Source of the DNA: Mytilus californianus
Lineage: Eukaryota
Assembly (NCBI RefSeq): GCF_021869535.1
Contig: NW_026262701.1
Coordinates: 6,510,001 to 6,574,000, forward strand
DNA length: 64,000 nt
Direction: 5' to 3'
The notes below the pieces were generated by a model. That model had not been told where the DNA came from. It did no database searches and was given only the letters and a program-made list of their open reading frames with translations. Both the position numbers and the translations under genes were made by a program. This document shows, one piece after another, positions 38,268 through 60,200 of this stretch. The first letter of the stretch is position 1, and every line of letters starts with the position of its first letter.

Positions 38268-38358
38268 CTTGTTAACTGATGATAAGTCAATATTTTGTAT
38301 GCATTAGCATATCTCCTTTCTAAATTGCCATGGTGAAATCTTTCTACTGCACACTTGA

Positions 38359-39177: not shown

Positions 39178-40723
39178 TTTTTTATTTTTCATGTTGAAAT
39201 GTGAAATTTCATAGACAAATTATGAAAATCAAGTAACACTTGTAAGATCGATCAAGTCAATAATGATATAATAAGATATATATATTACAACTGATTTAGT
39301 TAATTAAATGCTGCGCTTAACAATTGCCAATGCTGATCTATTTTTACTTTTTGTGCAGAGGTCAAGAAACATACAGAGTATTTTTATGCCCCCCACCTTC
39401 ACCAGAGTGGGCATTAAGTGTTACCCTCGTCTGTCTGTCCAAGCGTATGTACATAAGTGTGTCCAAAAATTGGTTTCTGTTCTCAAAGTATAGTTTACCT
39501 CAACCAAATATTACGAAACTTATACACAATGCTTATTACCACAAAACACAGATCAAGTTTGAATTTGGGTGGCATCGCTTCTACCGTTCTAGAGTTATGC
39601 TCCTTTACAAATGGAACAATTGCTGAAATTTTCTTTTCCGTTTTCTAATTTAAGTTTGCCTCAACCAAATGTTATAAAACTTATACGCAATGCTTTTTAC
39701 AATTCAATTCAATTCAATATTTATTGGAAAGAGCACAATAGAGGCGTGATCCAAATACAGACAATAATAATATTAAAACAACATATAAATGAAATATAGA
39801 TGCATGTAACAGCAAGTCATAAGTAAATTCTATAGATACCATAACATTCTAAGTATATTCTAAACTCATATTAATACCATCACACATATACATCACGATT
39901 ATTCTAAATTTTCATAATCCTACTTAAAACACACAATCACCTATATAAGATATATGTGTATATGCACAAACTACTATAAAGCATTATTATCTGATGAAAC
40001 AGTATGGTGGTGGTCTCTCAAATCAGAGCTTCTTCAATATACATACAAATAAATTTTAGTTCTTTTTCAGACATAGGATTTAACATTTTGGTAAAATTTT
40101 CATCCAAATTATTTGAGTTAATATCATTGATTTTATATTTAGATCTAATTTTGTTATATTGAGGACATTCAATCAAAAAATGTATCTCATTTTCAATTTT
40201 TCCTGTGCAAAATTTACAAAATCTCTCATTAGAGGGTATTATTGGTCTTGCATACCTACCAGTTTCTATTGCTAATGAGTGTGCACTTATTCTTAATTTA
40301 GTGAGTTTTTTTCTAAGATATTTAGGAACATTAAAGTTCAAATATTCTTGTTGTTTAAATTTAGTATAAATTTTACTAAAAAATAAAAGTTTACCACAGT
40401 TTCCATCTTTTATCTTAGATGGTTCAAATATAATTTTATTTTTGTAGAAATCTTCTAGTTTCTGTTTGAAATTACTATTACAATGCCTGTTTAAGGGTAT
40501 TCCAATATATTTTAATAATTCACATAATTTATTAGACCATGAATTTTCTCTATTTGTGAGAGTTTTGTCCACTTCAAAAGCAGCCTTGAGAATTTCATGT
40601 GGACCACCAGACCGTTCACCAATATCACTGAGACGCACATAGTATTTATACATAAGCTAATAGGTAATGTGCCCAATTCGCACCGCACTGCTAGAATGGA
40701 AGACTTTCCATGAACCCCAAGTA

Positions 40724-40931
40724 CTGTGGATTCATTATTATTCGTTGGATACCAATTTTCGTGGATTTCGTGGGTACAGGTGAACCACGAAATTAAATGT
40801 TCAACGAATAACAAATTTTCTAAAGGCTTGTATGCAGACTTCGGTAAAACCACGAAATTAGATAACCACGAATATGTAAGTTTTCCTAAATCCACGAAAA
40901 TTAGTACCCACGAAAATAAATGAATCCACAG
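40724..40931. mobile_element. Tc1/mariner-like MITE, 208 bp
   Basis: TIR CTGTGGATTCATT / AATGAATCCACAG with TA on both sides; removal restores RT ...FKNI-LGVHGK.... Confidence 0.93.
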
Positions 40932-41130
40932 TATGTTTTTAAATATGGAGTTTTGTGTTTTTTCTAATTTACTTTTGTCTAATGCTTCAAAATTTGGTTT
41001 GAATTCTGATATCCATACTTCTGATCCATAAGTTAAAATAGGAATTATCATTGAATTAAAAAGCTGAAGCCAAGTTTTAACAGACAAGTTTTCACTATAT
41101 GGGAGTTTAGACTTTAATGCAAAATATGCT

Positions 41131-41971
41131 TTTTTATACGTCCGTCAAATTTTTGACGGGACGTATTATGTTATACAAATGTCCGGCGTCCGTCCGTCTG
41201 TCTGTCTGTCTGTCCGTCTGTCTGTCCGGCGTAAACATGTCGCACTGTAACTTGAGAATGACTTATCCAAATTTCATGAAACTTAACATAGTTGTTTCTT
41301 ATGATGGTCAAACGATCTGTATACTTTTTAGTGAAAATAAGATTTAAACTTTTTGAGTTACAGGACTTAGTAACTAAAACAGGTGTGTGTTTTTTTTCAC
41401 ATGTCGCGCCGTATCTCAAAAACAATTTATGATTATTGCTTAAAACTTTACACACTTCTCAGTTATATTAATCTTAAGATCTGTATACTTTTTGGTGATG
41501 ATTCAAAATTTTATTTTAGAGATATTGAGTATTTTGTTAAAAAAGGGGGAGGGGTTTTTCACATGTCGCACCGTATCTCAAAAACGATTTATGATTATTG
41601 CTTAAAATTTTACACACTTCTTAGTTATATTAATCTAAAGATCTGTATACTTTTTGGTTTTGATTCAAAATTTTATTTTTGAGATATTGATTTTTTTTTT
41701 TTAAAAGGGGGGTTTTCACATGTCGTGCCGTATCTCAAAAACGATTTATGATTATTGCTTAAAATTTTACACACTTCTTAGTTATATTAATCTAAAGATC
41801 TGTATACTTTTTGGTTTTGATTCAAAATTTTATTTTAGAGATATTGAGTTTTTTGTAAAAAAAAAAGGGGGTTTTCGCATGTCACGCCGTATGTCAGAAA
41901 CTATTTATGCTTATTGCATAAAAATTCACACACAAGACAACGGGCGTATCATGCGCTCATGGCGCAGCTGT
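41131..41971 (+). mobile_element. HINE-like element with (GTCC/GTCT)n microsatellite and about three ~160-bp units
   Basis: Inserted in a T-run without TSD; removal restores RT ...SDKANK-AYFALKSKLPYSENLSVKTW.... Subterminal ATACGTCCGT/ACGGGCGTAT repeats and 3' hairpin TGCGC-TCATG-GCGCA. Confidence 0.9.
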
Positions 41972-42090
41972 TTATTAGCTTTATCTGAGAGGCTTGACAC
42001 TGCCTGTATAAATTTTCCAGAGCTATGAAAATCAACTAAGTATTTATAACAATCAACGATTTCAATTGCATTAGAACTGTAATAAAAGTA

Positions 42091-42267
42091 TCTTTGCAAA
42101 AATATAGTGCTGAATGGAAACTGGATGTGAACTTTAAGAAAACAAAAATTATAATTTTCTCTAAAAATAAAGTTTTCTTTATTTACTTTATTTTTAGAGA
42201 AAATTATAATTTTTGTTTTCTTAAAGTTCACATCCAGTTTCCATTCAGCACTATATTTTTGCAAAGA
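42091..42267. repeat. Perfect 82-bp inverted duplication with 13-nt spacer inside the RT region
   Basis: Arms 42091-42172 and 42186-42267 are exact reverse complements on reading. Confidence 0.92.
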
Positions 42268-43470
42268 ATCAAGAGAGTTCTCGAGACCAGCTGCAGATTC
42301 AGATATCAATAATAAATTATCAGCATACAATAAATGGTTCACTTTTTGATCATGTAAATTTACTGCTCTAGTTGAGTTTGTATCTAAGTATTTTCCTATG
42401 TCATCAACAAATATATTAAATAAAGTCAGACTTAAACTGTCTCCTTGTTTGACTCCCTGATTAGCAAGAAAAGGCTTAGTAAACATATAGCAAGAAAAGG
42501 CTTAGTAAACATATTTTGATATTTACATGAATATAAGGTATTAGAGTACATGTCATGCAGTATATTATAAAATTTGCCTTGTATTCCTTTATTTTGTAAT
42601 TTTAAGAATAGAGCTGATCTCCAGACACTGTCAAAAGCCTTTTTAAAATCTACAAAAAACACATATAGTTTCTTTTTGCATTTAAACAAATATTTGTTTA
42701 TTATTGTTTTTAAAATAAAGACATGATCTATAGTTCTGTAATTTTTTCTAAAACCACCTTGATTTGAAGATAATAAATTATTTGTTTCAAGAAAATCACT
42801 AAGTCTTTTTTGTAATATGGAGGTAAAGACTTTACCAAGACAGCTTGTTATGCTTATACCTCTATAGTTCCCACAATCAGATGGGTCACCAGATTTATAA
42901 ATTGATGTCAATAGAGAAATGTTCCAAATTTTGGGAAATTTTTCTGAATTAAGTATCTTATTAAAAAGTTTTGTTAGAAGTAAAACTAGAGTGTTTGACC
43001 CTACCTTTAGAAATTCATTAATTATCAGATCAGGACCTCCAGATTTTCCCTTTTTTAACTTCTTAATGCAGTCTTTGATTTCTTTACATATAATAGGGAC
43101 ATTAAGGGATGTATTAGTAAAGTTATGGTCTTTGTTCTCTATATTTTTAATTGTTTCAATTTTATCATTTTCACTTGAAGCAAGCAAATTTTTATAATGA
43201 ATCTCCCATTCTTTGGCAGAAATAGCAGGCTCACAGTTATTATTCTTTTTTTTGTAATTATTAATGCTACCCCAAAATTCTTTTGTGTTCTTTGGATTTA
43301 TATCATTTATTTGTTTTATCAAGGATTGAAAAAAATCCTTTTTCAGTTTATTTTATAAGTTTATTGTATTCTCTTTTACAGTTGCAATAAGTCAATCTTA
43401 ATGCATTATTATTAGGGCTTTAGCTAATCTATTTCCAAGGGAACGAACTTCTTTTCTAAGGAGTAAGCAA

Positions 43471-44592
43471 TCATTTTGACATCCATACTGTTTTAGGTTT
43501 TGCCTTTTTTGTATGTCTTTGCATTATTGATTTTTTTAAATTTGCTTTAAAAGAAACTGACTTTTTTGCAGCTTCTAAATAGATTTCATTAGTTTTGGTC
43601 ACCAAGAAGTCAATATCATTGAAATTATTATCGTCAATTAGTTTGTTTAAAGATGGAATGTCTTCTACACTGTTTTCTTCTAATAAAGCATCAATATAAA
43701 TGTCCTTGTTCTGATCGGTCCATTTAAAAGTACCAGGAAGGGACCATAGTTCTTCCTTATTTATTTCTTTAGAATTTTTAAAATTAAAAATATTCAATGC
43801 TATTAAACAATGATCTGATAGATCAGTAGGTGGTTTTACCATAAAATTATTGATGGTATAAAATAAATTCTGTGATGTCAACATATAATCTACTGTGCTC
43901 TTACCATTACTATTATAAAATGTAAAGTAGCCAAGTGAGTCACCAAGGAATCTTCCGTTGACAATTCTCATTTGAGAGGACTTACAGATATTCACTAGTA
44001 AATTCCCATGTAAATTGTTTTTTTGATCTAATTGATTTCTTTCTAAGGGTAAATCAGGTGTATAATCTTCTGGTACTGGACAGTCTGTAAAATTGTCATT
44101 AACACCATCATTTTGAATAAAGTCATTTAACCCTCCTGTGCGTGCGTTAAAATCACCACTTAAAATCACCTCACCTTTAGATAAGAAAAAAGAAATATCA
44201 TTTTCCATTTTTGTGAATGTCAGTTCAGAAATATCCTTATTAATATATGGTTTGATGTAGGTAAAACATAGAAAAATGTCTTTCTCCAAATTGAGAAAAG
44301 TTCCATCTATTTTTAACCATATTGAGAAGTTGTTCTGTTTTATTTCAGAAATTACATTTTTAAATTTGGCTTTTATAAATACAAGCATGCCACCTGATGG
44401 TCTTCCACTTTTTTTTGCCTTAATAGGCTTAATTGTATAGGGAGATGTAAAACCTGGAAGATTTCCTGGAGACTCTCTCAACATTGTTTCTGCAAAACAA
44501 ACTATATCATATTTACAAACATTTTCAATAAACAAATCATCCTGAAATTTATCTTCATTCAAACCATGGATATTCCAATAGGCAATATTCAT
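43471..44592 (-). pseudogene. LINE ORF2 apurinic-like (EEP) endonuclease domain
   Basis: MNIAYWNIHGL, DIVCFAET, ILSGDFNART, STVDY, LSDH motifs; frameshift after the linker. Confidence 0.93.
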
Positions 44593-47500
44593 ATAGGTAA
44601 GTCAAAAAATCTATCTATTTACAAAGGACGTGGGGAAAGGGAAATAACTCAATTATTATTACTTTAAAGATCTTTTTGGTTAATAATATGTGCAGGGACA
44701 TATATATTTGTAAATCATTGAAATGTTTAATGTGTATTTTTCTTTTTGTTTAGTTATCCAAATAATATATAAATTTATAAGTTTCTTTTACTTTACCTTA
44801 AACCACCATAATGAGAGTCAAACATGGAACAAGGGTAGTAATTCTAAATTTTTCTGTTTCATGAAATGTATGCTAATTTAATGTATCATAAACATTGTTA
44901 GCAATATGTATGTAATAGTGCCTAAACTATAATAACCAGTATACTTTTAAAAAGTGTATATTACAATATACATGATATTATTAATGACATTTTCAAGCAA
45001 CTTAAATAAAATGAGAACATACTATTGTGATTTTTGTACAAAAATAAAAATGACAACTATAATAAATGCTTATTATTCTAATTGGCCATAATGAAAGTAT
45101 AAGTATGACTAAAGTAAATGTACTGTACTATATAGTTTTTTTCTGTTAAATCTATAACTGAATTATCGTGCAAGTTCAATAAGTCTACTGAGAAGTTGGT
45201 TCATCTCACTTTGGTTGGATCTCCCATTGTTAGCATTATGATATTGTTGACTATAATAGTTATAGGGGTTTTGGTTTCCATTGTACGTGTAGTTTTGCCT
45301 GTAAGACTGATTGTCATTGTTTTGTCGACCATAGGAGTGGTTATGTCTAAAGTTTCCGTTTGGTGTTTTACTTGTAGAATTAGAAGTCTTGTACTCATTA
45401 TAAGGTTTAAGTCCCAATTCTGGGTTAAATGTGTTTTCAAGATTCTGACGAGGCATTTTTTGCCTAATTGATTAAAGGGAAAATTCGTGATTTTTTACTT
45501 TTCATCTTATTATGTTCATAATACCATAAAAAACATATTCACCAAGTTTTATCTGGATATGAACACTAATAAAGAAGAAAATTGGGAATTAATAATTTAA
45601 TTTATTTGAACTTCCTGACTTATGTGACGTAGTTTAAGTCTTTTTGCATGCCGGGAGTGAATAAATCTCATTGTAAGTCTTGTTCGTTAATCATCTAATA
45701 ACGCGATTTAAGCGCATCGACGACTTTTGGTGTAGCTATTAACCAACTAATAATTAAGAAAGTAAAGTGATCAGCCGTGCAACTTTCAAAATTAAAATGT
45801 ACGATTTATATTTAAAGGATTTCTGATATGATCATGATGATTATAGTAATAAAAGTAAATCATACAATAGAATATATTTTTATGAATTTTTTTTTCCGAT
45901 GGATATTTTGAACAAACATATATAACTGATATTGTTTTACAAATGCATGTTTGTATTCTCACCTGAAGGCTTTTACTTCAGTCTAGCAAACATTTCCCAC
46001 TAGTACTGTGTAAATACAATGTGTATTATACTGTGACACTTAGTGACTACCTGTTGAATGCGTGGTTAAATTCAAGGTAATTAAAAGATTAGCATTCTGT
46101 AATTCTATTCTTTTGATCTTCACTCAGTGAATTTTAGCCAACATGGTTCACCGTTACAGGTGTGAACAACATTTCGTATGAATGATAAAAACATTAATTA
46201 TTTGGGGAGGAATATGGTGGCAAAATACCTGAATCACCGTTATATATATCTTTTATATTTTGCGTAAGCTTAATTTTATAATAGATAGGTGAGTATTTTG
46301 TTGTAACATCGAAATTCTGTATTACTTTCAATTAAATAATTTTATAAATAAAAAAAAAAAAAGAAGAAAAAAAAAGAAAGAGATGAACGGTAAGTCACAT
46401 CAGATTCAAATATTTATATGGTTGATTGTCGTTAACTAGAGATGTATAGTTACGTGTCTCTGCGTTAACTTATAAGAATGACAGGAAAGTATATACTTGA
46501 AATAGATTTATGATGAATAATATGCAACTGCGGCACCCCTTTTTATCAAAGTGTACATGCATGTATTTTAATGACTGTCCGTTATTTCGATTAAGAATGA
46601 CAATTGTACGTGAAATTCTATAGTTGCCAGTGAGACTTTCTTTTACCAGATATGCGACTTTTCGTATTTATATTTTCTCTCATATTACTCTCATTTAATA
46701 TTTTAATATTTTATGCATAAGTGCAATATTTGGGAATAGTTTATTCCCCCACAAGCCAACTAAATAAATTAATCAACCATCTAGCTAATCAGACGTTAAT
46801 ACAAATATTATCAGTCTATCCGGAGTGAAGTTTCTTTATTTCTTCAAATAGATTTTTGGGGGATCATTAGTGTACGGCCAGTGGCATATATATTACATGC
46901 ATGTCGGAACAGAAAAGTTAGCATAATGTACTTTTAGAACCATGTTCACATCATTATACATTATACCCATCAATTGTGGTGATGACGAATTTCTTCAACT
47001 GTTCGAGAACAATCTAAATGAAATATAAATCTGTGATTTTACTATGTCCATAACTTCGATGAACCAAAGCAAGTAAGATATCAACCTGTATTTAAATCAA
47101 ATTGGTTCTGGATGTTTCTCTGTTATATTCAAAAACATGTATATATTTTAATTGCGACTATCTATAGTTCCGTAACTTTCTATCTAGGCTTATTAACCAA
47201 TGATCGACAAGTGCGTACATTTTTGTTAAATCAATATTTGTATGTTTCAAATTGTCCATCATTATTGACAACGAGTATATACTTACATTTTCCACAATTT
47301 ACCCTTGGAAAAATTTTATCAAATCTTCGTTTGGAATTATTTAGATTTTCATAAATATCATTCTTTACATCAGAAATGTTATTTATAAACAAGCGTATGT
47401 GTTTATTAATGACTAGTATATCACTATCGGACACGCAAGACAAAGATGTATATTACACCTGATAGTTTCAAAATGGAAAGTTACAAGTTATCGGCCGTGT

Positions 47501-47691
47501 ACACTGATCAATACCCTTAGAAATGAAGGGATGCATGAACTTGCTTTATGTAATTGTGTTATAAGAGTTTTTAAGCCCGACAGGAAATCGCATGAATACC
47601 TGGACGTGTCACCTCACAATACCTCTGGGAATAATTCCTTTAGCCATGCTGGTGATCAGATAAGGGAAGGTCTGAATTTATTTAAATAATT

Positions 47692-47810
47692 AGATATAAG
47701 AAAATGTGGTATGAGTGCTAATGAGACAACTCTCCATCCAAGTCACAAATTGTTGATTTATAAAAGTAAACCATTATAGTTCAAAGTACGGTCTTCAACA
47801 CGGAGCCTTG
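47692..47810 (-). mobile_element. Copy of the dispersed repeat family nested in the Kolobok-like element
   Basis: ATAAGAAAATGTGGTATGAGTGCTAATGAGACAACTCTCCATCC. Confidence 0.75.
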
Positions 47811-47953
47811 GTTTATTACATAAAAGTTTATTACATAAAAGAATTATGAACATATTAGATTTTCGAAAACAATTATACACGGGACACTTATTTATGACTT
47901 TGACTTTTCAACTAATTCCCATATAAATTTCTTGTTTCAAAACTTAGTAAAAA

Positions 47954-47987
47954 CAAGGATTTGTATAGTAACAAATACAAATCCTTG
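47954..47987. mobile_element. 34-bp palindromic micro-element with 7-bp TSD
   Basis: CAAGGATTTGTATAGTAACAAATACAAATCCTTG; GTAAAAA at 47947-47953 and 47988-47994. Confidence 0.8.
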
Positions 47988-50325
47988 GTAAAAAAAACCC
48001 AGTTTAAATACGACAAAAATAATTACATTTTCCGTATCATGTTAGTTAGGAAAGGTTGCACAACCATGTCTATTATAATCATTTTTGTTACCCGGGAAAC
48101 TTTTTATGCTTTTCTTGTCGGATAAAACAACTGTACGCTTGACAAGATATCGACACGCAATTAGACTACGTTAGGTTACTACTGGTTTTGGTCCTTTGTG
48201 GTTTATAGATATATCGTGGTTTCTAAACCGAGAAGATGTCAAAATGGCCGCATGCAGAGAATTGATACTCTAAATTTAAAATCGATGGTGATCTCTTATA
48301 CAGCAGAATAAAACTTTAATATTTATGAATTTGTGCTTTTTTATACAGAATGAACAGAATATCAATTTTTCATTTTTTTGCGAAGTTTCCCTTTAAAATG
48401 AATGCCATCCTCTTGAAAAATGGACGTGTTATTACCACTTATGTCATTGTTCAAAATGAATTCAACATCTGATTGGTTTTCACAGTATTTCTTTATTTCT
48501 TCATTGAATTCTTTAGCTTTTCTGTTGAAATGGGGCTGTTTCACACGATCAAATGTTGGTAAAACATGTATCTTGGAACGTCTATGACTGTTTTTTTGTG
48601 TTATCTATAAGGGTTTTCATTTCATTAACACATATAGTAGTTGCTTTGATACTCAAGTCATTGCTTCCTACACCTAACACTATATGTCTGGTGTCTTTGT
48701 TTGTTGTTTCAAGAATAACCTCCCCTGCACCTTTTATATACTTCTTTCCAGGTCCGACAACCTTGATTTTGGATTGTATGTTTCTGTACAGTTTTGAAGC
48801 CAATAGACCATTGCCATGAGAGTCGATAACTATTTCTAGATCTTGAGCATATGGTTTTTCTTTAGAAATACTGTTATCATCATTTTTCTTCATTTTTTGT
48901 TCATCTCTGTTTTTTTCACTTATAAGTGTATCTGTCATGTCATCATTTTGTGAAGTTAGCTCTGCAAATCGGTTCTGTGTGCTAACGTTTGCCTTCATAT
49001 TCAATTTCAGCTACATGTACATCATGTTGTTGCTTTTCCAGATCAGATAGTTTCTTGTTTAAAAACTGGTTTTGATCCTCAAGAGCCTCATTTTGTGTTC
49101 TCAATTTTTAGTTGGATGACTCCAAATTTGTCAACGCTTTCTTTAATTCAGAATTTTCCTTCAACGTGGCAGTGTTAGTAACTTCGTTTCTTTGTAAATT
49201 TATTTTTGTCAAAATTGACTTTTCAAAGTCTACAAGTTTCTTGTCAAGGACTGCTGTACTTACATATTGTTTCTTCGTTTAATTAGATTATAACACAAGA
49301 CCATGAAGCTCTTTTTCTAATTTTTGTTGATTTTCTTTTAGGTCATTCAGATTTTGATTAAGTTCTGATATTTTGTTATTGTAGTTATTGTTATCTATAG
49401 GGTTGTCATCTTTTAAGCCTGCACAGGTGTTTGACACTTCACATATTTTGCTCTCTAATAGTTGCAATGATGCAAGAGTATTTTCTTCAGATTGTTTATT
49501 TATCACAGTAGCATGTGTTTTTGGTGTTACAATTCTAGGGGTTGACATTTTCATAGGTTTTGTCTCACTTTTGTCCAATTGAATTATGAAGTCATTATAT
49601 TCTGTGTTTGATGAATCAAGAAGACTATTGTGTTCACAATTTGTGACTGTATTGTCTAATTTAAAATGATTGTCTAGTATTGATTGAAGATATTGGAACT
49701 CTGTTTTTGCCCATGATAAATAATGTGTTCCTTGAACTGTTATGAGAAAGGTTGTTGGATATAAATGAAAAGTAAGTAATTTGTTTGAGTCAGTATTTAT
49801 TTCATCTTCAGTGCCTTTAAAAAGTTGTATAAATATTTCTCCAATTATGCCCTCTTTTGTATTTTCTTTGTCAGTCCATTTGCAAGTATAATTGTCCAAA
49901 GCCCCAAATTGAGAGTGGTATCGAAAGGCAAAAGTTTTTATCCAAAGCAGAAACCGATCTTTTGATTCAACTCGGAATGCTACCATACGCGCAGCTGGCC
50001 TGTACAACTCGTGATCAAGTTTCTCAAAAGGTGCCTATATAGCAATGCCTGTTGGCGGATTTGGTTGATCAGGCAACTTATACTTTATAAATTCAGTGTC
50101 GGGCATCCAAAGGTTGGATTGAGTAACGTTCTCAACGGCAATTTTAGGTAGATCGTCAAAAATAGACGCCATATTATTGTTAGTTTTTACAGTGACGTGA
50201 CAAGTTTCTGGTAAAAAAATGTAGATAACGGGCGCAACGGCCATAGTTGACTGTTGTGATGGATGTAATATAGATATAGCACAAAATGTGCACTTGGAAC
50301 TATTCCCTGACCTTTGTCCTTTTTA

Positions 50326-50532: not shown

Positions 50533-50747
50533 TATTTAGGAATTGTTTAATATCATAGTTTGCCTATTATTAAAAGTACACATGTTCCTCAACCGGAACC
50601 GGAAGTACAATAAAACTCTGATCAATTTCGAATTTGGGTGGCGTCACTTTTACCCTTCTTGGGTTATGTCCCTTTTTATACGCCTGTATACAGGACGTAT
50701 TATGGTATACCGTAGTCTGTCAACATGTTGGACAACAACTCAAAACT

Positions 50748-51587
50748 TTTTTATGCCCCACCTAGGGGCATTTTGTTTTTTGGTCTGTGCATCCGTTAGT
50801 TCGTTTGTCCGTTTGTCCTGCTTCAGGTTAAAGTTTTTGGTCAAGGTACTTAGTCCCCTACCGACGAAGTCGAGGGAGACTTTAGGTTTGCACCTCGTCT
50901 GTCTGTCTGTCCATCCGTCAGTCCGGCAAATCAGTTTTCCACACTTTTTTTCTTCCTGCTTGAAGATATTGATTTGATATTTGGTATATGCTTTTATCAT
51001 GACAAGTTATAGATTAAATTCAAATTTTGTTCCGGTTTGATGATTTTGTGCAGAGTTATGGTCCTTTGACTTAGAAAATTCACTCAAATAATCAGTTTTC
51101 CTCACTTTTTTTTGTCATGCTTGAAGATATTTATTTGAAAATTGGTATATAGTTTTATGATGACAAGTTACATATCAAATTCAAATTTTGTTCCAGTCTG
51201 ATGATTTTGTGCAGAGTTATGGTCCTTGTACTCTGAAAAATCACTTGAATAATCAGTTTTCCACACTTTTTTTGCATCATGCTTGGAAGAGATTGACTTG
51301 ATATTTGTTATATAGTTTACACCATGACAAGTTAAAGATCAATTTTTTCCAGTACAATGAATTTTTAACTGGTAAGGGACTATGTATTGCCATGCATTAC
51401 TCTCAGAATGCTTGTTTTTGATGAAGTTGAAGTCCAATCAACTTGAAACTTAGTACACATGTTCCCAATGATATGATCTTTCCTAATTTTAATGCCAAAT
51501 TAGAGTTTTGATCCCTATTTCACCGTCCACTGAACATAGAAAATGATAGTGCGAGTGGGGCATCCGTGTACTATGGACACATTCTTG
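50748..51587 (+). mobile_element. HINE-like element inserted in the poly(A) tail of LINE A
   Basis: 5' TTTTTATGCCCCAC and 3' GTGGGGCAT plus GTGT..ACAC hairpin; itself interrupted at 50849-51415. Confidence 0.78.
50849..51415 (+). mobile_element. HINE-like element nested in the 50748 element (innermost layer)
   Basis: AGTCCCCTACC / GGTAAGGGACT subterminal inverted repeats, (GTCT)n and about three tandem units; the host sequence resumes TTTTTGATGAAGTTG. Confidence 0.78.
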
Positions 51588-52943
51588 TTTTTTTTGGTGG
51601 AAGAAGACTTCAAGTCTTCTGAAAGCCTTTACTGCCGGCTGTAAAATCATTGAACCATCACCAGGATGTATGCTGTATCCCTTTCTGTGCTTTACAATTT
51701 CATAACAACCTCCGTGCCATATCTTGACACCGATGTTTACCATGTTTACACATGATCTAATCTGCATCATTTAATTTATTAGTTAGGTTGAAAAACGATC
51801 ACTATCGTTAGTGTTATAATTTCTCATGTTTTAATGTATTGATATCAACCCTTTTATTTATGTAAATTATTAGATTTCATCTCATCTTACATGAACGTTA
51901 TTTATTTACTTGTAACTGGATGTCTTTAAAGTAGGGTTTGTAGTACGCATGCATTCATTTGGTATCGGGTCGGTTCACCCTGAGTTCGTCCCCATAGAGT
52001 ACATTCACCCTGGGTTCCTTCTCCTTACTTATATCGTGGAAGTATTATATTGACTGCTTTTATCAAGGACGTTTTATATGTCCTTGCAATTATTAAAAAA
52101 TAATAATACTATGGGTATTAAAGTTTAATAAACTTATTCGGATATTTATATGGTATAAATTCATTGAAATTCAGAACCACTTTGGTAACGTATCTGCACA
52201 TGTGCACAAACGGGAAATTTAATTGTGCATCGGAAAGTTTCAAAATAATGATAAACAGAATTGCCATATATTCATACAATCTATCTTGAGTTAAAATCAA
52301 GTTTATACGTGGAGAGTACGACTTCAAATCAATGATGCTTTAAAAAATACACGGATTTAGTTGTTCCGTCTGCGTTCAGATCTTTAAAGCAATCAATTAA
52401 GTCATATTCCACTTTTAGACAACATGTGTTTTTTAAAGCGAAAGTTAGAATATTTAAGTATGTTATTGCGATAATAAAGAGTCAAGCGCACACATGAATC
52501 TGCTGGTGTTTTACACATCAAACGACGCACCGTCTGTTGACAGAAATATCAATGTACAAACTAATGTCTGTTGACGGATTCCATTTCGAGTATGTAGTTT
52601 TCATGTCGGTCATTGTCGGAATGTCCCCAATGATTGCCTTTATTACCTTAATACGTTTCAAAGTTTTAGAAGTGATAAAAAACGGGATTTAACAACTGAA
52701 TAGTCCAGCTCTTTACCGTTATTCGTCATTAAGGTACACACATTATCGAGGCTCGAGTACAGAACCAGTAATTCGTTGCAGTCAATAGTTTTATTTTCAT
52801 GAAAAATTTCAGAAAAGGGCTGTGTGACTCCTGACGGAAAATGCCATTCCTACCCTCATACTTTTGTGTAAAAATATTAGACGAAAAACAAATATGATAT
52901 ATATGGGTCAAGCACTTTAAATGAACGGGTTTGAAATGCTAAA

Positions 52944-53031
52944 AGAGTCAAGTGCACACATGATTCTGTCAACTGACTGTGCATCGTTTGATGTGTAAAA
53001 CACCAGCAGATTCACATGTGCACTTGACTCT
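52944..53031. mobile_element. 88-bp MITE; truncated inverted copy at 52478-52545
   Basis: AGAGTCAAGTGCACACATGA / TCACATGTGCACTTGACTCT termini; the interior is the reverse complement of 52478-52545. Confidence 0.75.
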
Positions 53032-53188
53032 AAATTATCGCTATAACATAGCAAGGTCATCACCTGACATGACCAGTCAATCCTTGGCCTGACACAAATC
53101 TGCATTGGATATATTTAGAATTTTTCAATATATGTTTATAATGAAAAGCCCTAGTTTAAGCAAAGTTGACTAAAATCTTGGTGGCCAG

Positions 53189-53829
53189 TTTTTAGCTCAC
53201 TGGGGCCCTTTGGCCCCATGTGAGCTTATGCCATCACTTGGCGTCCGTTGTCTGTCGTCGTTAACTATTTAAAAAATCTTCTCCTCTGAAACTACTTGGC
53301 CAAATACCTTCAAACTTTAACTAAATGTTCCTTAGGGTATCTTGTTTATAAATTGTATCCGAAGTTTGTATCCATTGACAAACATGGCCGCCATGGCTAA
53401 AAATAGAACATAAGGGTCAAATGCAGTTTTTGGCTTATTTCTCAAAAACTAAATCTTTTAGAGCAAATGTGACAGGGATAAAATTGTTCAATTGGTCAAG
53501 ATCTATCAGCTCTGAAATTTTCAGACGAATCGAACAACCCATTGTTGGGTTGCTGCCACCGAATTGGTAGTTTTAACAAAATTTTGCAGTTTTTTGTTAT
53601 TATTTTGAATATTATTATAGATATATATAAACTGTAAGCAGCAATAATGTTCAGCAAAGTAAGATCTACAAAAAAGTAAATATGACCATAATTGTCAATT
53701 GACCCCTTTAAAAGGAGTTATTGCCCTTTAAAGACAATTTTACACAATTTGTTCATCAAATTTGCTAACATTTAAAAATCTTCTCCTCTGAAATACAAGT
53801 GAGTGATTCAGGCTCTTGAGAGCCTCATG
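53189..53829 (+). mobile_element. HINE-like element
   Basis: 5' TTTTTAGCTCACTGGGGCC..GGCCCCATGTGAGCTT; 3' GTGAGTGATTCAGGCTCTTGAGAGCCT hairpin. Confidence 0.8.
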
Positions 53830-54814
53830 TTTTTGTCTCGCCTTGACGGAGTCAAAAAGCAAGACATAGGTATGCTGTTTCCGGTGTCGGCGACGGTGTC
53901 AACAATGTATTAGTTTGTGATTAGGTCTAGTTCATGGTGAACCACTAGTGGTAGGTCAATGATATTTGGTATGCAGTTGTATTAGCATTGGCACATCTCA
54001 TTACCATGGAGATTATTTGGCCCCGCCCCCTCAGTCAAGGTCTATTGACTTTGAAACTTTACATAGTTTACATGTATTAGTTTGTGATTAGGTCAATTTA
54101 TGGGGAACCACTAGTGGTAGGTCAATGATATTTGGTATGCAGTTGTATAAGCATTGGCATATCTCATTTCCATGGAGATTATTTGGCTCCGCCCCCTTAG
54201 TCATGGTCTATAGACTTTGAAAATTTTGCTAAGTTAACATGTATTAGTTTTTGATTAGGTCAATTCAAGGGGAACCATTAGTGGTAGGCCAATGTTAATT
54301 GGTGTTCATTTGTATAAGCATTAGCACATCTCATTTCCACGGAGAATATTTTGCCCCGCCCCCTCAGTCATGGCCTATTTACCTTGAAACTTTTGCTTAG
54401 TTTACATGTATTAGTTTGTGATTAGATCAGTTTAAGATGAACTGCTAATGTTAAGTCAATGATATTTGGTATGCAAATTTATTGGCAAGTATCGTTTCCA
54501 TGGAGATTATATAGCCCCATCCCTGATCATGGTTCATTGACTTTGAAACTTTTACATAGTTTACAAGTTAATGTTTGTGTTTATGTTTGTTTAAAGGGAA
54601 CGACTTATAATAAGTCAATGGTATTTGGTATGCAGTTGTATTAGCATTGGCACATCTCATTTCCATGGAGATTTTTTAGCCATGTACCTTCAGTCATGGT
54701 TCATCGACTTTGAATATTTGCATAACTTACATGTAAAAGTATTGCTATTTTAATTTCAACATTTGCATTATCAAAATTACAAAAAGGCGAGACATATCTC
54801 TGTGATAACAGTTT
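53830..54814 (+). mobile_element. HINE-like element with about five ~165-bp units (family of 10622)
   Basis: TGTCTCGCC / GGCGAGACA subterminal inverted repeats; colinear with 10622-11447. Confidence 0.85.
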
Positions 54815-55156
54815 ATTAAAGTTAACAATCTGCCTTTGACAGAAAACTTTCAAGTGAAACCAAATCAATTACTGTTATAATTGCTTGGCGAAATTGCATT
54901 GCATCAAGTTGACCATGCTGAGACGAATGTATGGAATTTAGTTATAGAAAATTTAATTTGAATCAACAGTATTTGCAGATTTTTATGTTAAGTATAGTGA
55001 GTTTTGGGTGAGTTATGAGTATTATTATTTTTGGAAGAAAAAAATACGTCGAAAGCAATAAAGGGACAAAGCAGGCTGGGTTGGTGGGGGCTGCTTTTAT
55101 TGTAATTCAAGTTACCTTTTATGCATCTTCTTCCACCTCAGATTTATCTTTTGTTT

Positions 55157-55170
55157 TCTCTCTCTCTCTC

Positions 55171-55246
<76 letters not shown>
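55157..55246. repeat. (CT)n microsatellite within the last codons of LINE A ORF2
   Basis: About 45 CT units read directly. Confidence 0.95.
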
Positions 55247-55249
<3 letters not shown>

Positions 55250-55821
55250 AAATTGGTTATTCTTTATTCTATTCTTTAACTCAACCATATTTGGATTTGT
55301 TCCATTTAATTTTACATTAATATATATAATTCTTTGTAATTATGACTAACAGATTCAATAATAAACTTTCATGTTTGCAACCAAGAAGCGCATTCTCTTT
55401 GTTTAGAACAAAGTTTATAAAAAGAGTTTCACAATATTTGAAAAAGACTGCCACAATTGAAAAATTATTGGGCATTCAAAAAAAGGTGTTCAAAGGTTTC
55501 TTCTCCAAGTTTACAAAAAGTACATAACTTGGTATCTTTTTATTTAATTTTGTACAAAAAGGTATTAGTTGCTATAATTCTATGCAAAAATTTGTATTGA
55601 AAGGTTCTTAAATAAGCATCTCTACAAAACTTTTTTGTTACCATGAAATATTCTGACCATTCTGTTGAATCAATAACCAACAGTTCAAACATTTGATTGT
55701 TGGAAGTTGAATAACATCATCTACTAAGTTTTTATATACAAATTTGGCTTTCACATTACACATGATTTTCTTTAAGAAAGTATCACCAGTGTTAGACTTA
55801 TCCAAATCATGATTTAGACAG

Positions 55822-56693
55822 TTCTCGTCGACTTCTGTCGCAGAAAGCTCGACATAGGGATAGTGATGTGGCAGTGGCGTTAAATAACTTCTTAAAAGCT
55901 TAATATTTCAGAAGGTAGAAGACTTGGATGCTTCATACTTTGTATATAGATGCCTTATGATTTGAAGTTTCTCTCTGTCATATGTCCATTGTCCTTGACC
56001 TCATTTTCATGGTTCAGTGACTACTTCAAAAAAACGTTAAGATTTTTTGTAATGTTAATTTCTCTCTTATTATGAGTAATAGGATAGCTTTATTTGGTAT
56101 GTGCGTACCTTGCAAGGTCCTCATGCCTGTCAGACAGTTTTCAGTTAACCTCTACCTCATTTCATGGATCAGTGAACAAGGTTAAGTTTTCGTGGTCAAG
56201 TCCATATATCAGACACTTTAAGCAATAGGTCTACTATATTTGGTGTGTGGAATGATTGTAAGGTGTACATGTGCAACTGACAGGTGTCATCTGACCTTGA
56301 CCTCATTTTCATGGTTCAGTGGTTAAAGTTAAGTTTTTGTGTTTTGGTCTTTTTGTCTAATACTATATGCAATAGGTCAACTATATTTGGTGTATGGAAA
56401 TATTTTACGATGTACATGTCAATCTGGTCGTTTTTATTTGACTTTGACCTCATTTTCACTGTTCATCGCTCAGTGTTAAGTTTTTGTGTTTTAGTGTTTT
56501 TCTTAAACTATAAGCAATAGGTCAACTATATTTTGTGTATGGAATGATTGTAGGGTGTACATGTATTTCCGGTTTGGTTTATCTGATCTTGGTTAAGTTT
56601 ACGTGATAGTTGTAGTAAAGCTTTATATTTAGGACTATCAACATAAAATCAATGATCAGTAAAGCAGGCGAGACATTTCAGCATGTGCACTCT
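55822..56693 (+). mobile_element. HINE-like element interrupting LINE A ORF2
   Basis: 3' GCAGGCGAGACATTTCAGCATGTGCACTCTT; internal GACCTCATTTTCATGGTTCAGTG units; LINE frame continues on both sides. Confidence 0.78.
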
Positions 56694-56758
56694 TCTTTCA
56701 TAACTGTTAGGGATTTTTGAAATCAGACCATAATATTTGTTAAATTGTTGGTTTGTAC

Positions 56759-58163
56759 TTTTAAGCTCACCTGGCCCAAAGGGCCAAGTGAGCTTTTCTC
56801 ATCACTTGGCGTCCGGCGTCGGCGTTAACTTTTTACATTTTGAACTTCTACTAGAGAACCACTGAATGGAATGAAACCAAACATGGCATGAATGTTCCTT
56901 ATGAGGTGCTGACCAAGTGTTGTTACTTTGTAGCGGATCCATCATCCAAGATGGCCGCCAGCGGGGGACTTAGTTTAACATTGGACCCTATGGGAAATAC
57001 ATACAAATGTCTTCTTTTAGAGAACCACTAAATGGAATGAAACCAAACATGGCATGAATGTTTCTTATGAGGTGCTGACCGAGTGTTGTTACTTTGAAGC
57101 CGATCCATAATCCAAGATGGCCGCCTGCAGGGGACTTAGTTTAACATGGGACCCTATGGGAAATACATACAAACGTCTTCTCATCACTTGGCGTCCGGCG
57201 TCGGCGTTAACTTTTTACATTTTGAACTTCTACTAGAGAACCACTGAATGGAATGAAACCAAACATGGCAAGAATGTTCCTTATGAGGTGCTGACCAAGT
57301 GTTGTTACTTTGAAGCTGATCCATCATCCAAGATGGCAGCCAGCGGGGGACTTAGTTTAACATAGGACCCTATGGGAAATACATACAAATGTCTTCTTTT
57401 AGAGAACCACTGAATGCAATGAAACCAAACATGGCATGAATGTTCCTTATGAGGTGCTGACCAAGTGTTATTACTATGAAGCCGATCCATAATCTAAGAT
57501 GGCCGCCAGCGGAGGACTTAGTTTAACATAGGACCCTATGAGAAATACGTACAAATGTTTTCTTTTAGAGAACCATTGAAAGGAATGAAACCAAACATGG
57601 CATGCATGTTCCTTTTGAGGTGCTGACCAAGTGTTGTTACTTTGAAGCTGATCCCTCATCCATGATGGCTACCAGATGTGGACAATGTTTAACAAAGGAC
57701 CCTATGGACAATACATACAAATGTCTTCTTTTAGAGAACCACATACTGAATGGATTGAAACCAAACATGGCATGAATGTTCCTTATGAGGTGCTGACCAA
57801 GTTTTGTTACTTTGAAGCTGATCCTTCATCCATGATGGCCGCCAATGGGGGGACTTCCTTTAACATAAGACCCTATGGGAAATACATACAAATGCTTCTT
57901 CTAGAGGTGCACTGAATGGAATGAAACCAAAACATGGGATAAATGTTTCTTATGAGGTGCTGATTAAGTGTTGCTACTTTGTTGCCGATTTACTGTTCAA
58001 GATGGCCACCAGGATTTTTTATTAAATTACAGGACCAATATTAAACCAAATTTGGCCTCACTCATTATTATGGTATCTGTTATGATTTTAATCTATTTTT
58101 ACATGATTTCCAAAACCAAAGTAGAATCAGGTGAGCGACACAGGCTCTTGAGAGCCTCTAGTT
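56759..58163 (+). mobile_element. HINE-like element with an expanded array of ~165-bp units and a duplicated leader
   Basis: 5' GCTCACCTGGCCCAAAGGGCCAAGTGAGC hairpin; leader repeated with period 383 (56801, 57184); 3' GGTGAGCGACACAGGCTCTTGAGAGCCT. Removal joins LINE A ...QFQE-KVQTNN.... Confidence 0.88.
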
Positions 58164-60200
58164 CTTGAAATTGCTCAAATTTATAAAAATTCATATTTTC
58201 ATGATTAATAAGGTCACTCACTGACTGCACACCTCCCTTTTTAGATTGAATGTAATATGGAAAATCATCCAAAGAAGAAAAGTTCAAAATATCTATAGAT
58301 AAAATGTCACTGACAGAGAAAGAATTTTTACATCTTTTAGAAATCTCAATCAGTCTTTCTTTCAGAAGATGTAAACCCCTATCACCCCTATACTGTATAA
58401 GGTCTGCCAATAACAACTGCTGCCAGCCACCACTAGGGTTTGACAGCAGTCTTTTTATCCGACTAATTTTCAAATAGATATTAAAGGAATGAAGATGTAC
58501 CATATTAATTCCACCTTATGAAATATCACCAATAAGTGTGTTACGCTTAATTCTGTCTGGTTTTCCATTCCATAAGAAATCATCAACTCAAAACTGCTTT
58601 TACTAATTTTCATGAAACTTTTGTAAATTATTTATATCTATATAAGTAAGCTCCCTTTCGCTTTTTATAAATTTTAAATTTTACCTTTCTGAGTTATGGG
58701 ATTTTATTCATAAAAACAGGGGGGATTTTCCCGTTTTTGGACTAACTCAAAAATGCTTTGAGCTGTTTTTCATCAAACTTTGATGACGGGTTTACATGGT
58801 TTATATCTATTAAAACAAGCTCCCTTTAGTTTTTTTTTTTTATAAATTTCTGATATGACATTGAGGAGTTATGGCACTTTATTTGTTGAAAAATCGACGG
58901 GCATATCATGCACTCATGGCGTAGCTCTTTATTAACGTTATATGCAAGCGGGGGCATCATCTGTGTCCCATGCACACATTCTCAATTTACTCTATATTAA
59001 TCCAATATTTTATATATATATATGTTATATTTTTACATGCCATATCTTGTTGGCAATATGCTCTTACATCTACATTTGTACATATAGTATTTAAATAGCA
59101 ACAAAATATTATTTATGGTTTTACTGTTATCAAAATCTCAGACACACCTAATATGACTTTGTTTGAGCTAAAGGGCAAGAAAATGTCATAATTTCTAATC
59201 GAGTCTATCATGGACATGATGGATAGTGAAAAATTTTGGACAACATTACATATCCAAAAAGTGTGAAAAATTCTTTCTCTGATTTCTGAACAAAAAGTAC
59301 ATTGTTCAGTTTCTTTTAATTTACATTTCAATAAAAATGAATTACATGGTAGAATCCTATGAACAATCTTGAAATGGAAATTTTGTAAAAATGAACTTCT
59401 GGTTATAATAAAAGGCATAGAGTACCCGGTAAATAGTATTCCAATCTTCAATCTGCATATTCAGATCTATTCTGGGCCATATTTATCAGTATTGTTTTCA
59501 ACTTTGAACTTATTTTGCAACTTGGAAAAATTTACCAGGATATCAATTATTAACCTGCTGTGTTTGATGCAAGCAGTGAGACATCCCAGAGATGCACTTT
59601 CATTGAACACTGTGGCCCACATACTTTTTTCCATTTTTGTGGTTCGATTGTAATGGATTTTTATCACAGAAATTTAAGTTGATAAGAAGGTAAATTGAAG
59701 AAGACAGATTAATGCTTCTTTCACTGATCATGCTGATACAGTGTAACTATGTAATTCAGTGACATTCCTTCTTTCCCTCAATCTCAAATCTAAGTTTTCC
59801 AGATTTTTTTCTTTAGGTCTACGGAAATTGAATTTAATTTTAGTACAGCAGAGGTTAATAATGACTTACAGGTGGTGTTGGCTCTTCGTTTCAGTAGACC
59901 AATTATAGCCCTTTCATAAATAAAGTACATTTCAAGACTTTTTTTTTGTCATGCCTACAGACATGACAGATTTGGATGTGAATTTTTGTACATTGTGTAT
60001 AATGATGAGTTTATACAAGCCTCATTTGTTATTCGTTGTAGTTGACTAACTGCAGGCAGGATCACTCCTGTTGAACCAGAACATCTAGTTTTAAATTTAA
60101 AAATAGTTACATTTCTAGATTATAAATAATACCTTATTTTAAGTGAAACATTGGAGCAATATTTTTCACCAAACATTTAGTTCTCACTGTTTCGTTGTAG

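What the first reader, a model, noticed from the sequence alone, without database searches (positions are those of the whole stretch)
39178..59720. A 20-kb Russian doll: one transposon stack up to six layers deep
Junction matching gives a consistent nesting. Tx1 fragment B (ORF end split between about 58986 and 39380) contains HINE host 1 (about 440 bp net, now 19.6 kb). Host 1 contains (a) a CR1/L2 LINE (TACAAT TSD), which contains a Kolobok-like element, which contains a micro-element and a dispersed repeat; and (b) HINE host 2, which contains Tx1 element A (12-bp TSD), which contains the HINE at 50748, which contains the HINE at 50849. Almost every boundary is supported by a TSD or a restored reading frame. 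The stack gives an absolute order of activity for about ten families. Over 95% of the interval arose by serial insertion into one small target.
Basis: partly seen in the sequence, partly recalled or inferred. Interest (0 to 1): 0.72.

Follow-up and report, generated by a model that had tools for sequence, protein, structure and literature searches.

The report
Six-deep nested transposon pile, mussel
This 20-kb stretch of mussel (Mytilus) DNA really is a pile of at least 14 jumping genes inserted one inside another, up to six deep; such piles are well known and ordinary, and this one is useful mainly as a local timeline of transposon activity.

Summary
Uninterrupted copies elsewhere in the same 1.65-Gb genome rejoin each pair of split halves, mostly at the base. 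An old poly(A) LINE fragment (LINE-B) is split at 39385|58992 by 19,606 bp, which is 95.4% of the interval. That insert is one 446-bp satellite-type Helentron derivative (HINE1). HINE1 holds two insertions. One is a full-length 6.65-kb LINE with a TACAAT duplication. The other is HINE2, which holds a 5'-truncated L1/Tx1-type LINE with a 12-bp duplication. That LINE holds a 270-bp HINE, which holds a 565-bp HINE. This makes six layers.

I add a second six-deep branch (Tx1-A > element X > HINE-g) and six further elements, for 14 insertions in all.

Corrections:
- The "micro-element" and "dispersed repeat" in the Kolobok-like element occur in all 39 other family copies checked. They are passengers, not local insertions.
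- The order obtained is a partial, relative order of insertions, not an absolute order of family activity.
- Tx1-A has lost about 460 bp of its 3' region.
- The LINE clade names remain untested.

Identity to the nearest copies rises with depth, from 88% to 96%. All ten Helentron-type insertions sit at or next to oligo-T runs. Nested transposon clusters are long known, and other first-stage notes report more in this genome.

The parts
39176..39385 (-). Layer 1: LINE-B, 3' part. It is an L1/Tx1-type, A-rich-tailed, 5'-truncated old LINE fragment.
   Evidence: In 10 of 11 other genomic copies it is contiguous with the sequence matching 58992-59471. T-rich tail at 39176-39189.
58992..59545 (-). 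Layer 1: LINE-B, 5' part. It carries a zf-RVT motif and lacks about 360 bp that other copies have between 59471 and 59472. Weak protein-level similarity continues to about 59630.
39386..39703 (+). Layer 2: HINE1 left module (subTIR ATGCCCCC, inverted repeat GGGCAT, GTCT/GTCC microsatellite) plus 1.45 units of its 161-bp repeat.
   Evidence: More than 4,600 first-look candidates in the genome; scored copies 85-88% identical. Structure read.
50606..50675 (+). Layer 2: HINE1, rest of the last repeat unit. It begins with the second TACAAT copy.
   Evidence: Matches the terminal unit of intact copies L015-L017.
58935..58991 (+). Layer 2: HINE1 right module, with 3' subTIR GGGGGCAT and palindrome TGTGT...ACACA.
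   Evidence: In L015-L017 it follows the last repeat unit directly.
39704..50605 (-). Layer 3a: LINE(a), full length, about 6.65 kb net. It has a 5'UTR, ORF1, ORF2 with endonuclease and reverse transcriptase, and a (TTGAA)n 3' tail. The 6-bp TSD TACAAT lies at 39698-39703 and 50606-50611.
   Evidence: Pfam Exo_endo_phos and RVT_1. Colinear with a 94-98% identical copy on contig C88 that lacks all five internal extras.
40724..40931 (.). Layer 4: MITE-1, 208 bp, with about 46-bp inverted ends and a TA duplication. It sits inside LINE(a) ORF2.
   Evidence: Absent from four other LINE(a) copies. Ends read.
41135..41977 (+). Layer 4: HINE-d, with about 160-bp repeats, inserted at a T-run inside the reverse transcriptase of LINE(a). 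Boundaries are good to about 7 bp.
   Evidence: Absent from four other LINE(a) copies; one 97% identical copy seen elsewhere. Ends read.
42091..42173 (.). Inverted duplicate, 100% identical, of the neighbouring LINE(a) segment 42185-42267. Not a transposon.
45476..48392 (.). Layer 4: Kolobok-like non-autonomous DNA transposon. TTAA duplication at 45472-45475 and 48393-48396; ends 5'-AGGGAAA...TTTCCCT-3'. It lacks about 1.0 kb that other copies have between 46354 and 46350.
   Evidence: Absent from the C88 LINE(a) copy. Both halves are 94-97% identical to many copies, in which they lie about 1.0 kb apart.
50326..50532 (.). Layer 4: MITE-2, 207 bp, with 25-bp perfect inverted ends and a TA duplication. 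It sits in the LINE(a) 5'UTR.
   Evidence: Other LINE(a) copies skip it exactly; separate copies are 94-99% identical. Ends read.
50677..50747 (+). Layer 3b: HINE2 left module (hairpin, GTCT microsatellite), ending in the left copy of the 12-bp TSD at 50736-50747.
   Evidence: Contiguous with the right part in intact copies L039, L042, L044, L046, L048, L049.
58584..58934 (+). Layer 3b: HINE2 right part. It holds the right TSD copy at 58584-58595, two units of about 160 bp, and the right module.
50748..58583 (-). Layer 4: Tx1-A, gross span. It is an L1/Tx1-type LINE, 5'-truncated. Its own pieces are tail Ts at 50748-50752 and 51588-51590, a probable 3' terminus at 55143-55160, a (CT)n run at 55157-55245, and body pieces 55246-55826, 56696-56762 and 58163-58583.
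   Evidence: Colinear pieces in L070-L084. The family 3' end lies about 490 bp beyond 55245. An intact relative encodes RVT_1 and zf-RVT, and its longer homologues add Exo_endo_phos.
50753..51587 (+). Layer 5: HINE-e, about 270 bp net (50753-50849 + 51415-51587), inserted in the T-run tail of Tx1-A.
   Evidence: 15 intact copies join the two halves.
50850..51414 (+). Layer 6: HINE-f, 565 bp, with 161-bp repeats, inserted at GGTAG^TTTTT of HINE-e.
   Evidence: Contigs from four runs show the uninterrupted 270-bp form elsewhere.
51591..55142 (+). Layer 5: element X, gross span. It is 1,934 bp net (51591-53193 + 54812-55142). It has 12-bp subterminal inverted repeats GGTGGAAGAAGA and lacks its last 19 bp. 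It is probably a repeat-less Helentron derivative.
   Evidence: Copies are 86-99% identical. The two halves abut in L085 and L086 and in about 20 other copies.
53194..54811 (+). Layer 6: HINE-g, with 167-bp repeats, inserted in a T8 run of X.
   Evidence: 94.7% identical to a copy in L021.
55827..56695 (+). Layer 5: HINE-h, with 147-bp repeats, in Tx1-A. About 12 bp of the target is lost.
56763..58162 (+). Layer 5: HINE-i, with 166-bp repeats, inserted at ACTTTT^TCTTG of Tx1-A.

Best explanation
The interval is a transposon graveyard built by ordinary serial insertion, with no function implied.

An old L1/Tx1-type LINE fragment (LINE-B) was hit at a T-run by a 446-bp satellite-carrying non-autonomous Helentron (HINE1). 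HINE1 was then hit twice. A full-length LINE with a microsatellite tail entered by target-primed reverse transcription and made a 6-bp duplication. A second HINE (HINE2) entered at another T-run.

HINE2 next received a 5'-truncated poly(A) LINE (Tx1-A) with a 12-bp duplication. Its poly(A) tail and internal T-runs then received four more Helentron-type elements (HINE-e, X, HINE-h, HINE-i). Two of these (HINE-e, X) were hit again by HINEs (HINE-f, HINE-g).

The LINE(a) branch separately collected two TA-duplicating MITEs, one HINE and one TTAA-duplicating Kolobok-like element.

What is shown: the nesting topology, the duplications and the T-run targets. What is inferred: the temporal order (inner after outer), and the idea that the HINE preference for oligo-T drives the stacking. 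Each LINE tail or HINE brings new T-runs, which could serve as further targets.
For: - Rejoined halves match single families in uninterrupted copies: LINE-B, HINE1, HINE2, Tx1-A, HINE-e, X, LINE(a) and its five extras.
- Duplications fit each class of element: TACAAT 6 bp, CAACTCAAAACT 12 bp, TTAA, and TA twice.
- None of the ten Helentron-type insertions has a duplication, and all sit at or beside oligo-T. PMC7492417 describes the same for bivalve HINEs.
- Gap-excluded identity of the window copy to its nearest relatives rises with depth: 87.8% (LINE-B), 87.7% (HINE1), 88.8% (HINE2), 90.7% (Tx1-A), 93.3% (HINE-e), 96.0% (X).
- In the other branch the inner elements are 94-99% identical to their nearest copies.
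Against: - The identity figures are pairwise values against the best-scoring copies only. They are not distances from a consensus, and layers 1 to 3 cannot be told apart by them.
- The junction between Tx1-A and X needs extra events: loss of 19 bp of X, loss of about 460 bp of the Tx1-A 3' region, and growth of a (CT)n run. The match of 55143-55160 to the Tx1-A 3' terminus is short and T-rich.
- No empty-site allele was recovered for any layer. The public runs were available only as very short contigs.
Confidence: 0.9

Rival explanations
1. Part of the stack arrived ready-made. Some inner elements were already inside their host when the host copy inserted here, as passengers. In particular, Tx1-A plus X may have entered as one chimeric retrotransposition, either by read-through from a source copy that already held X or by template switching.
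For: This is shown for one branch. The micro-element and the dispersed repeat in the Kolobok-like element occur in all 39 other family copies. For Tx1-A and X, the 12-bp duplication brackets both together, and X has no flanking duplication of its own.
Against: - Helentron-type elements make no duplication anyway.
- X copies L085 and L086 have only 5 Ts at their left end, while the window has 13. The extra Ts fit a split poly(A) tail, which exists only after retrotransposition.
- 55143-55160 resembles the Tx1-A 3' terminus.
- None of the scored X or Tx1-A copies shares the X/Tx1-A junction.
- For every other layer, uninterrupted family copies are the rule.
Confidence: 0.12
2. The nesting is an assembly artefact. 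Repeats were mis-joined, so the halves belong to different loci.
For: The region is almost entirely high-copy repeats. One perfect 83-bp inverted duplication (42091-42173 against 42185-42267) is the kind of feature assemblers can create.
Against: - Mis-joins would not produce matching 2, 4, 6 and 12-bp duplications.
- Mis-joins would not give base-exact restoration of six different families across up to 19.6 kb.
- A 184-nt contig from an independent run crosses the LINE(a)/HINE1 junction with one mismatch (record 9).
Confidence: 0.03
3. The apparent halves are separate truncated copies brought side by side by deletion or recombination, not single elements split by insertion.
For: The region does contain deletions: about 460 bp in Tx1-A, about 360 bp in LINE-B, and about 1.0 kb in the Kolobok-like element.
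Against: Each pair of halves is complementary to the base, with no overlap or gap beyond the expected duplication. Both halves of a pair have the same orientation and similar divergence.
Confidence: 0.03

Closest known systems
Nested transposon clusters and interruption-based chronologies.
   Same: Younger elements sit inside older ones. Rejoined halves and duplications define the order, and divergence rises from inner to outer layers.
   Different: Here most layers are Helentron-derived satellite carriers and non-LTR elements in a bivalve, not LTR retrotransposons. The recurrent target is an oligo-T run, not the body of the previous element.
Cg_HINE, Pearl and DINE-1: non-autonomous Helentrons carrying satellite-like repeats in bivalves (PMC7492417)
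   Same: The left module has a subTIR, a complementary inverted repeat and a GTCY microsatellite. The centre holds 147-167-bp tandem repeats. The right module has a subTIR and a palindrome. There is no duplication, and the target is oligo-T. That paper expects frequent integration into other transposons.
   Different: These are mussel families with their own sequences. HINE-e and X carry no tandem repeats. No autonomous Helentron was examined.
Kolobok superfamily of DNA transposons (PMC9587614)
   Same: TTAA duplication and 5'-RR...YY-3' ends (AG...CT). The superfamily is common in bivalves, including Mytilus.
   Different: This copy has no transposase ORF, and no long terminal direct repeats of the KolobokP type were seen. 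Superfamily membership rests on the ends alone.
L1-Tx1 and CR1/L2 LINE lineages of bivalves (PMC10294476)
   Same: Tx1-A and LINE-B relatives have APE, RT and zf-RVT domains, poly(A) tails and variable duplications. Tx1 is the only L1-superfamily clade that paper lists for bivalves. LINE(a) has EN and RT domains and a microsatellite tail, like CR1/L2-type elements.
   Different: No reference sequences were available, so no phylogenetic placement was made. The proposed ORF1 esterase of LINE(a) gave no Pfam match.

Membership tests
HINE (non-autonomous Helentron) | Left module with a 5' subTIR, a nearby complementary inverted repeat and a short GTCY-type microsatellite | tested here: met
   HINE1 has ATGCCCCCCAC...GTGGGCAT...GTCTGTCTGTCC. 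HINE-e has ATGCCCCACCTAGGGGCAT followed by GTC-rich sequence. HINE-f has AGTCCCCT...AGGGAGACT...GTCTGTCTGTCTGTCC.
HINE (non-autonomous Helentron) | Central array of satellite-like tandem repeats, 140-180 bp | tested here: met
   Repeats of 161, about 160, 161, 167, 147 and 166 bp occur in HINE1, HINE2/HINE-d, HINE-f, HINE-g, HINE-h and HINE-i. HINE-e and X have none.
HINE (non-autonomous Helentron) | Right module with a 3' subTIR followed by a short palindrome | tested here: met
   HINE1 has GCGGGGGCAT then TGTGTCCCATGCACACA. HINE-e has GTGGGGCAT then GTGTACTATGGACAC. X has TCTTCTTCCACC then AGAGCAATCAGCTCT, the last seen in L085 and L086.
HINE (non-autonomous Helentron) | No target-site duplication; insertion at oligo-T | tested here: met
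   All ten insertions (HINE-c, HINE1, HINE2, HINE-d, HINE-e, HINE-f, X, HINE-g, HINE-h, HINE-i) sit at or beside T-runs and have no duplication when compared with uninterrupted hosts.
HINE (non-autonomous Helentron) | An autonomous Helentron (Rep/helicase plus endonuclease) sharing the ends | not tested
   No autonomous partner was searched for.
Kolobok DNA transposon | TTAA target-site duplication | tested here: met
   TTAA at 45472-45475 and 48393-48396. The C88 copy of LINE(a) has the site uninterrupted.
Kolobok DNA transposon | Ends 5'-RR...YY-3' with terminal inverted repeats (piggyBac has 5'-CC...GG-3') | tested here: met
   The ends are AGGGAAAATTCG...CGAAGTTTCCCT. The criterion comes from PMC9587614.
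Kolobok DNA transposon | A Kolobok-type DDD/E transposase in autonomous relatives | not testable with these tools
   The window copy has no long ORF.
L1/Tx1-type LINE (LINE-B, Tx1-A) | ORF2 with APE endonuclease, reverse transcriptase and a C-terminal zinc-binding motif | tested here: met
   L076 has an 889-aa open frame with RVT_1 and zf-RVT. Homologues of about 1,260 aa add Exo_endo_phos. LINE-B has zf-RVT and weak similarity to Tx1-A.
L1/Tx1-type LINE (LINE-B, Tx1-A) | Poly(A) tail, 5' truncation and a duplication of variable length | tested here: met
   Family copies end in T-runs of 9-50 nt on the window's + strand. The window copy is 5'-truncated at 58583 and has a 12-bp duplication.
L1/Tx1-type LINE (LINE-B, Tx1-A) | Phylogenetic placement in the Tx1 clade and not L1 proper | not tested
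   No reference RT set was available. PMC10294476 lists Tx1 as the only L1-superfamily clade in bivalves, so Tx1 is likely by inference.
CR1/L2-type LINE (LINE(a)) | APE endonuclease and RT in ORF2; non-poly(A) microsatellite 3' tail | tested here: met
   Exo_endo_phos and RVT_1. The 3' end is (TTGAA)n next to the duplication.
CR1/L2-type LINE (LINE(a)) | ORF1 with an esterase (SGNH-like) domain; clade placement by RT phylogeny | tested here: inconclusive
   The ORF1 segment 48582-49004 has a DSHGNG-like motif but gives no Pfam match even at E<=5. No phylogeny was made.
Tc1/mariner-type MITE (MITE-1, MITE-2) | TA duplication and terminal inverted repeats; short and non-coding | tested here: met
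   Each element is flanked by TA on both sides and has 25-46-bp inverted ends. Sizes are 208 and 207 bp.

The most novel reading that the evidence does not exclude
Stacks like this may be self-reinforcing. Bivalve HINEs seek oligo-T, and every new LINE poly(A) tail or HINE brings fresh T-runs. One hit would then raise the local chance of the next, so small targets grow into multi-kb graveyards much faster than random insertion predicts. A weaker variant is that the wider repeat-only region acts as a transposon trap of the piRNA-cluster kind.
Probability: 0.3. Interest if true: 0.4.

Novelty: already known. Interest (0 to 1): 0.2.

Why it matters
The locus gives a clean, base-resolved partial order for 14 insertions from about 15 families in a mussel genome.

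- **Calibration.** The order can calibrate divergence-based dating of bivalve transposons.
- **Target preference.** Ten of ten Helentron-type insertions sit at or beside T-runs, including three or four in LINE poly(A) tails.
- **Limit of nesting order.** Passengers carried in by a host element break the rule 'inner is younger'.
- **Possibly active families.** Several families have near-identical copies and may still be active: X at up to 99%, MITE-2 at up to 99%, the Kolobok-like element at 97%, HINE-d at 97%, and LINE(a) at 97% to one copy.

Beyond this the structure is ordinary. It implies no new mechanism and no host function.

Tried and rejected
- **A second TACAAT at 45863-45868.** I first took this as the 5' end of LINE(a). 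I rejected it because HINE1 resumes at 50606 and a 94-98% identical LINE copy runs straight from the match to 45476 into the match to 48400.
- **X as a poly(A) retroposon or 3'-transduced flank of Tx1-A.** Other X copies have only 5 Ts at that end, plus subterminal inverted repeats and a 3' hairpin. This reading is kept only as a minor rival.
- **Contiguity of Tx1-A to 50748.** The last 490 bp or so of the family 3' end was searched for in the whole window at low stringency. It is absent except for a 17-bp terminal remnant and a CT-rich seed.
- **A duplication for LINE-B.** None was found between the left flank (38300-38366) and 59400-60400. Its 5' end remains undefined.
- **Reads.** All 24 runs found are kept as Logan contigs, mostly unitigs of 80-180 nt in these repeats. 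They show the uninterrupted 270-bp HINE-e form elsewhere in all four runs laid (three coded organisms), but cannot show empty-site alleles.
- **Rfam and tRNA scans** of 38.0-60.5 kb found nothing.
- **Pfam on the putative ORF1 esterase and the ORF2 C-terminus of LINE(a)** found nothing.
I used hit-table coordinates instead.
- **Consensus sequences.** None were built. Ages are given as pairwise identities.

Full report
**Setting.** The window is contig C121:6,510,001-6,574,000 of a 1.65-Gb, 175-contig genome. GC content is about 32%. One protein hit carries a Mytilus edulis label. Earlier notes of this scan call the genome the California mussel; I did not verify the species. The interval has no assembly gaps, no tRNA genes and no Rfam matches.

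**Method.** For each claimed pair of halves, I searched the window's own genome with one half by reference. I then checked whether uninterrupted copies continue into the other half. 

**Layer 1, LINE-B.**
- Window 58991-59471 has at least 66 relatives.
- In 10 of the 11 fetched copies this match abuts the match to 39385-39177; L006 has a ~32-bp gap there. Intact sequence reads ...GAGTATTTTT|CTATATTAATCC....
- So 39386-58991 (19,606 bp, 95.4% of the interval) is an insertion.
- LINE-B lies on the minus strand and has a zf-RVT motif and a T-rich tail at 39176-39189.
- It lacks about 360 bp that the other copies have at 59471/59472.
- Nucleotide similarity to the family stops at 59545 and protein-level similarity at about 59630.

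**Layer 2, HINE1.**
- It consists of 39386-39703, 50606-50675 and 58935-58991, 446 bp in total.
- The family gave more than 4,600 first-look candidates.
- Intact copies L015-L017 show the left module, 161-bp repeats, a distinct last unit and the right module in one piece.
- It has every structural mark of bivalve HINEs listed in PMC7492417: subTIR, complementary inverted repeat, GTCY microsatellite, repeats of about 160 bp, 3' subTIR, palindrome, no duplication and an oligo-T target.

**Layer 3a, LINE(a).**
- It spans 39704-50605 on the minus strand and is flanked by TACAAT.
- ORF2 has Exo_endo_phos and RVT_1. The 3' end is (TTGAA)n.
- A 94-98% identical copy on contig C88 is colinear with it but lacks five stretches:
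  - MITE-1 (40724-40931, TA duplication)
  - HINE-d (about 41135-41977, at a T-run in the reverse transcriptase)
  - an 83-bp inverted duplicate (42091-42173)
  - a Kolobok-like element (45476-48392)
  - MITE-2 (50326-50532, TA duplication)
- Net length is about 6.65 kb, so the copy is full length.
- The Kolobok-like element has a TTAA duplication and 5'-AG...CT-3' ends. This is the Kolobok signature as opposed to piggyBac (PMC9587614).
- Its two halves lie about 1.0 kb apart in other copies, so this copy is an internal-deletion derivative.
However, all 39 other family copies span them without a gap. They are passengers of the family, not insertions at this locus.

**Layer 3b, HINE2.**
- It consists of 50677-50747 and 58584-58934. 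It entered HINE1 between the last unit and the right module.
- Intact copies join the halves with a 9-12-bp overlap. This corresponds to the exact 12-bp duplication CAACTCAAAACT.

**Layer 4, Tx1-A.**
- Gross span is 50748-58583 on the minus strand, 5'-truncated at 58583.
- Pieces 58163-58583, 56696-56762 and 55246-55826 are colinear in 15 copies. The gaps are HINE-i (56763-58162, at ACTTTT^TCTTG) and HINE-h (55827-56695).
- A relative has an 889-aa frame with RVT_1 and zf-RVT. Homologues of about 1,260 aa add an APE domain.
- PMC10294476 lists Tx1 as the L1-superfamily clade of bivalves. 'Tx1' is therefore likely but untested.
- The family continues about 490 bp beyond 55245 to a poly(A) end. 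In the window this stretch is replaced by (CT)n at 55157-55245.
- The (CT)n run is preceded by TTTATCTTTTGTTTTC (55143-55160). This resembles the family's terminal TTTATCTTTTATTTGTTTTTC.

**Element X.**
- Its halves abut in other copies.
- HINE-g (53194-54811) sits in a T8 run of X and forms a second six-deep branch.
- X has 12-bp subterminal inverted repeats and, in other copies, a 3' hairpin. It looks like a Helentron derivative without repeats. The window copy lacks its last 19 bp.
- X copies L085 and L086 carry 5 Ts at the left end, while the window has 13. The best reading is therefore that X and HINE-e both landed in the poly(A) tail of Tx1-A.

**Layers 5 and 6.**
- HINE-e (50753-50849 plus 51415-51587) is uninterrupted in 15 copies.
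- HINE-f (50850-51414, 565 bp) sits at GGTAG^TTTTT of HINE-e.
- Short public contigs from four runs show the uninterrupted form elsewhere, as skips of 565-568 nt.

**Age check.** Gap-excluded identity of the window copy to its nearest relatives, by layer:

| Layer | Element | Identity to nearest copies |
|---|---|---|
| 1 | LINE-B | 87.8% |
| 2 | HINE1 | 87.7% |
| 3 | HINE2 | 88.8% |
| 4 | Tx1-A | 90.7% |
| 5 | HINE-e | 93.3% |
| 5 | X | 96.0% |

- In the LINE(a) branch the inner elements are 94-99% identical to their nearest copies.
- These are pairwise values against the best hits, not consensus distances.

**Verdict.** The stack is real and six deep, on two branches, with 14 insertions inside LINE-B. 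It is explained by ordinary serial insertion, helped by the HINE preference for oligo-T. Nested transposon clusters are long known, and other first-stage notes report several in this same genome. The finding is correct but ordinary.

Noticed in passing
window 38352-39175: Another HINE (HINE-c, 38364-39175, with repeats of about 170 bp) lies in the terminal T-run of LINE-B. The sequence left of it (ACTTGATTTTT) resembles the family's ...ACTTGTAATTTTT end. The stack therefore probably starts near 38352, not 39178.
   Followed up: partly
window 42091-42267: A perfect 83-bp inverted duplication with an 11-bp spacer lies inside the LINE(a) reverse transcriptase and is absent from four other copies. 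It is either a very recent fold-back event or an assembly artefact.
   Followed up: partly
window 55143-55245: A run of about 44 CT units replaces about 460 bp of the Tx1-A 3' region. The family has a CT-rich seed there. How the deletion and the expansion are linked is unexplained.
   Followed up: partly
window 50533-50649 (run X16, record 9): A 184-nt contig from another individual or species crosses the LINE(a)/HINE1 junction with one mismatch. Its first 67 letters do not fit MITE-2. This hints at an allele without MITE-2, so the insertion may be polymorphic or lineage-specific. Runs X1 and X3 (organism A) had no contig at 50576-50578.
   Followed up: no
window 57128-57202: HINE-i has one 216-bp spacing among its 166-bp repeats, and a second copy of its left-end motif (TCTCATCACTTGGCGTCCGGCGTC) at 57178-57202. 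It may be two tandem or nested copies of the same family.
   Followed up: no
window ~52177: Many copies of element X carry about 155 bp extra at this point. There are thus two X subfamilies, and the window copy is the short form.
   Followed up: no
window 47947-47994: A 34-bp palindromic micro-element (CAAGGATTTGTAT...ATACAAATCCTTG) is flanked by the 7-bp repeat GTAAAAA. It matches the type described in the scan's other note on this stretch. Here it is fixed in the whole Kolobok-like family.
   Followed up: partly
window 59471/59472: LINE-B lacks about 360 bp that most of the other copies examined have at this point (8 of the 11 fetched, and many further copies in the hit table).
   Followed up: no
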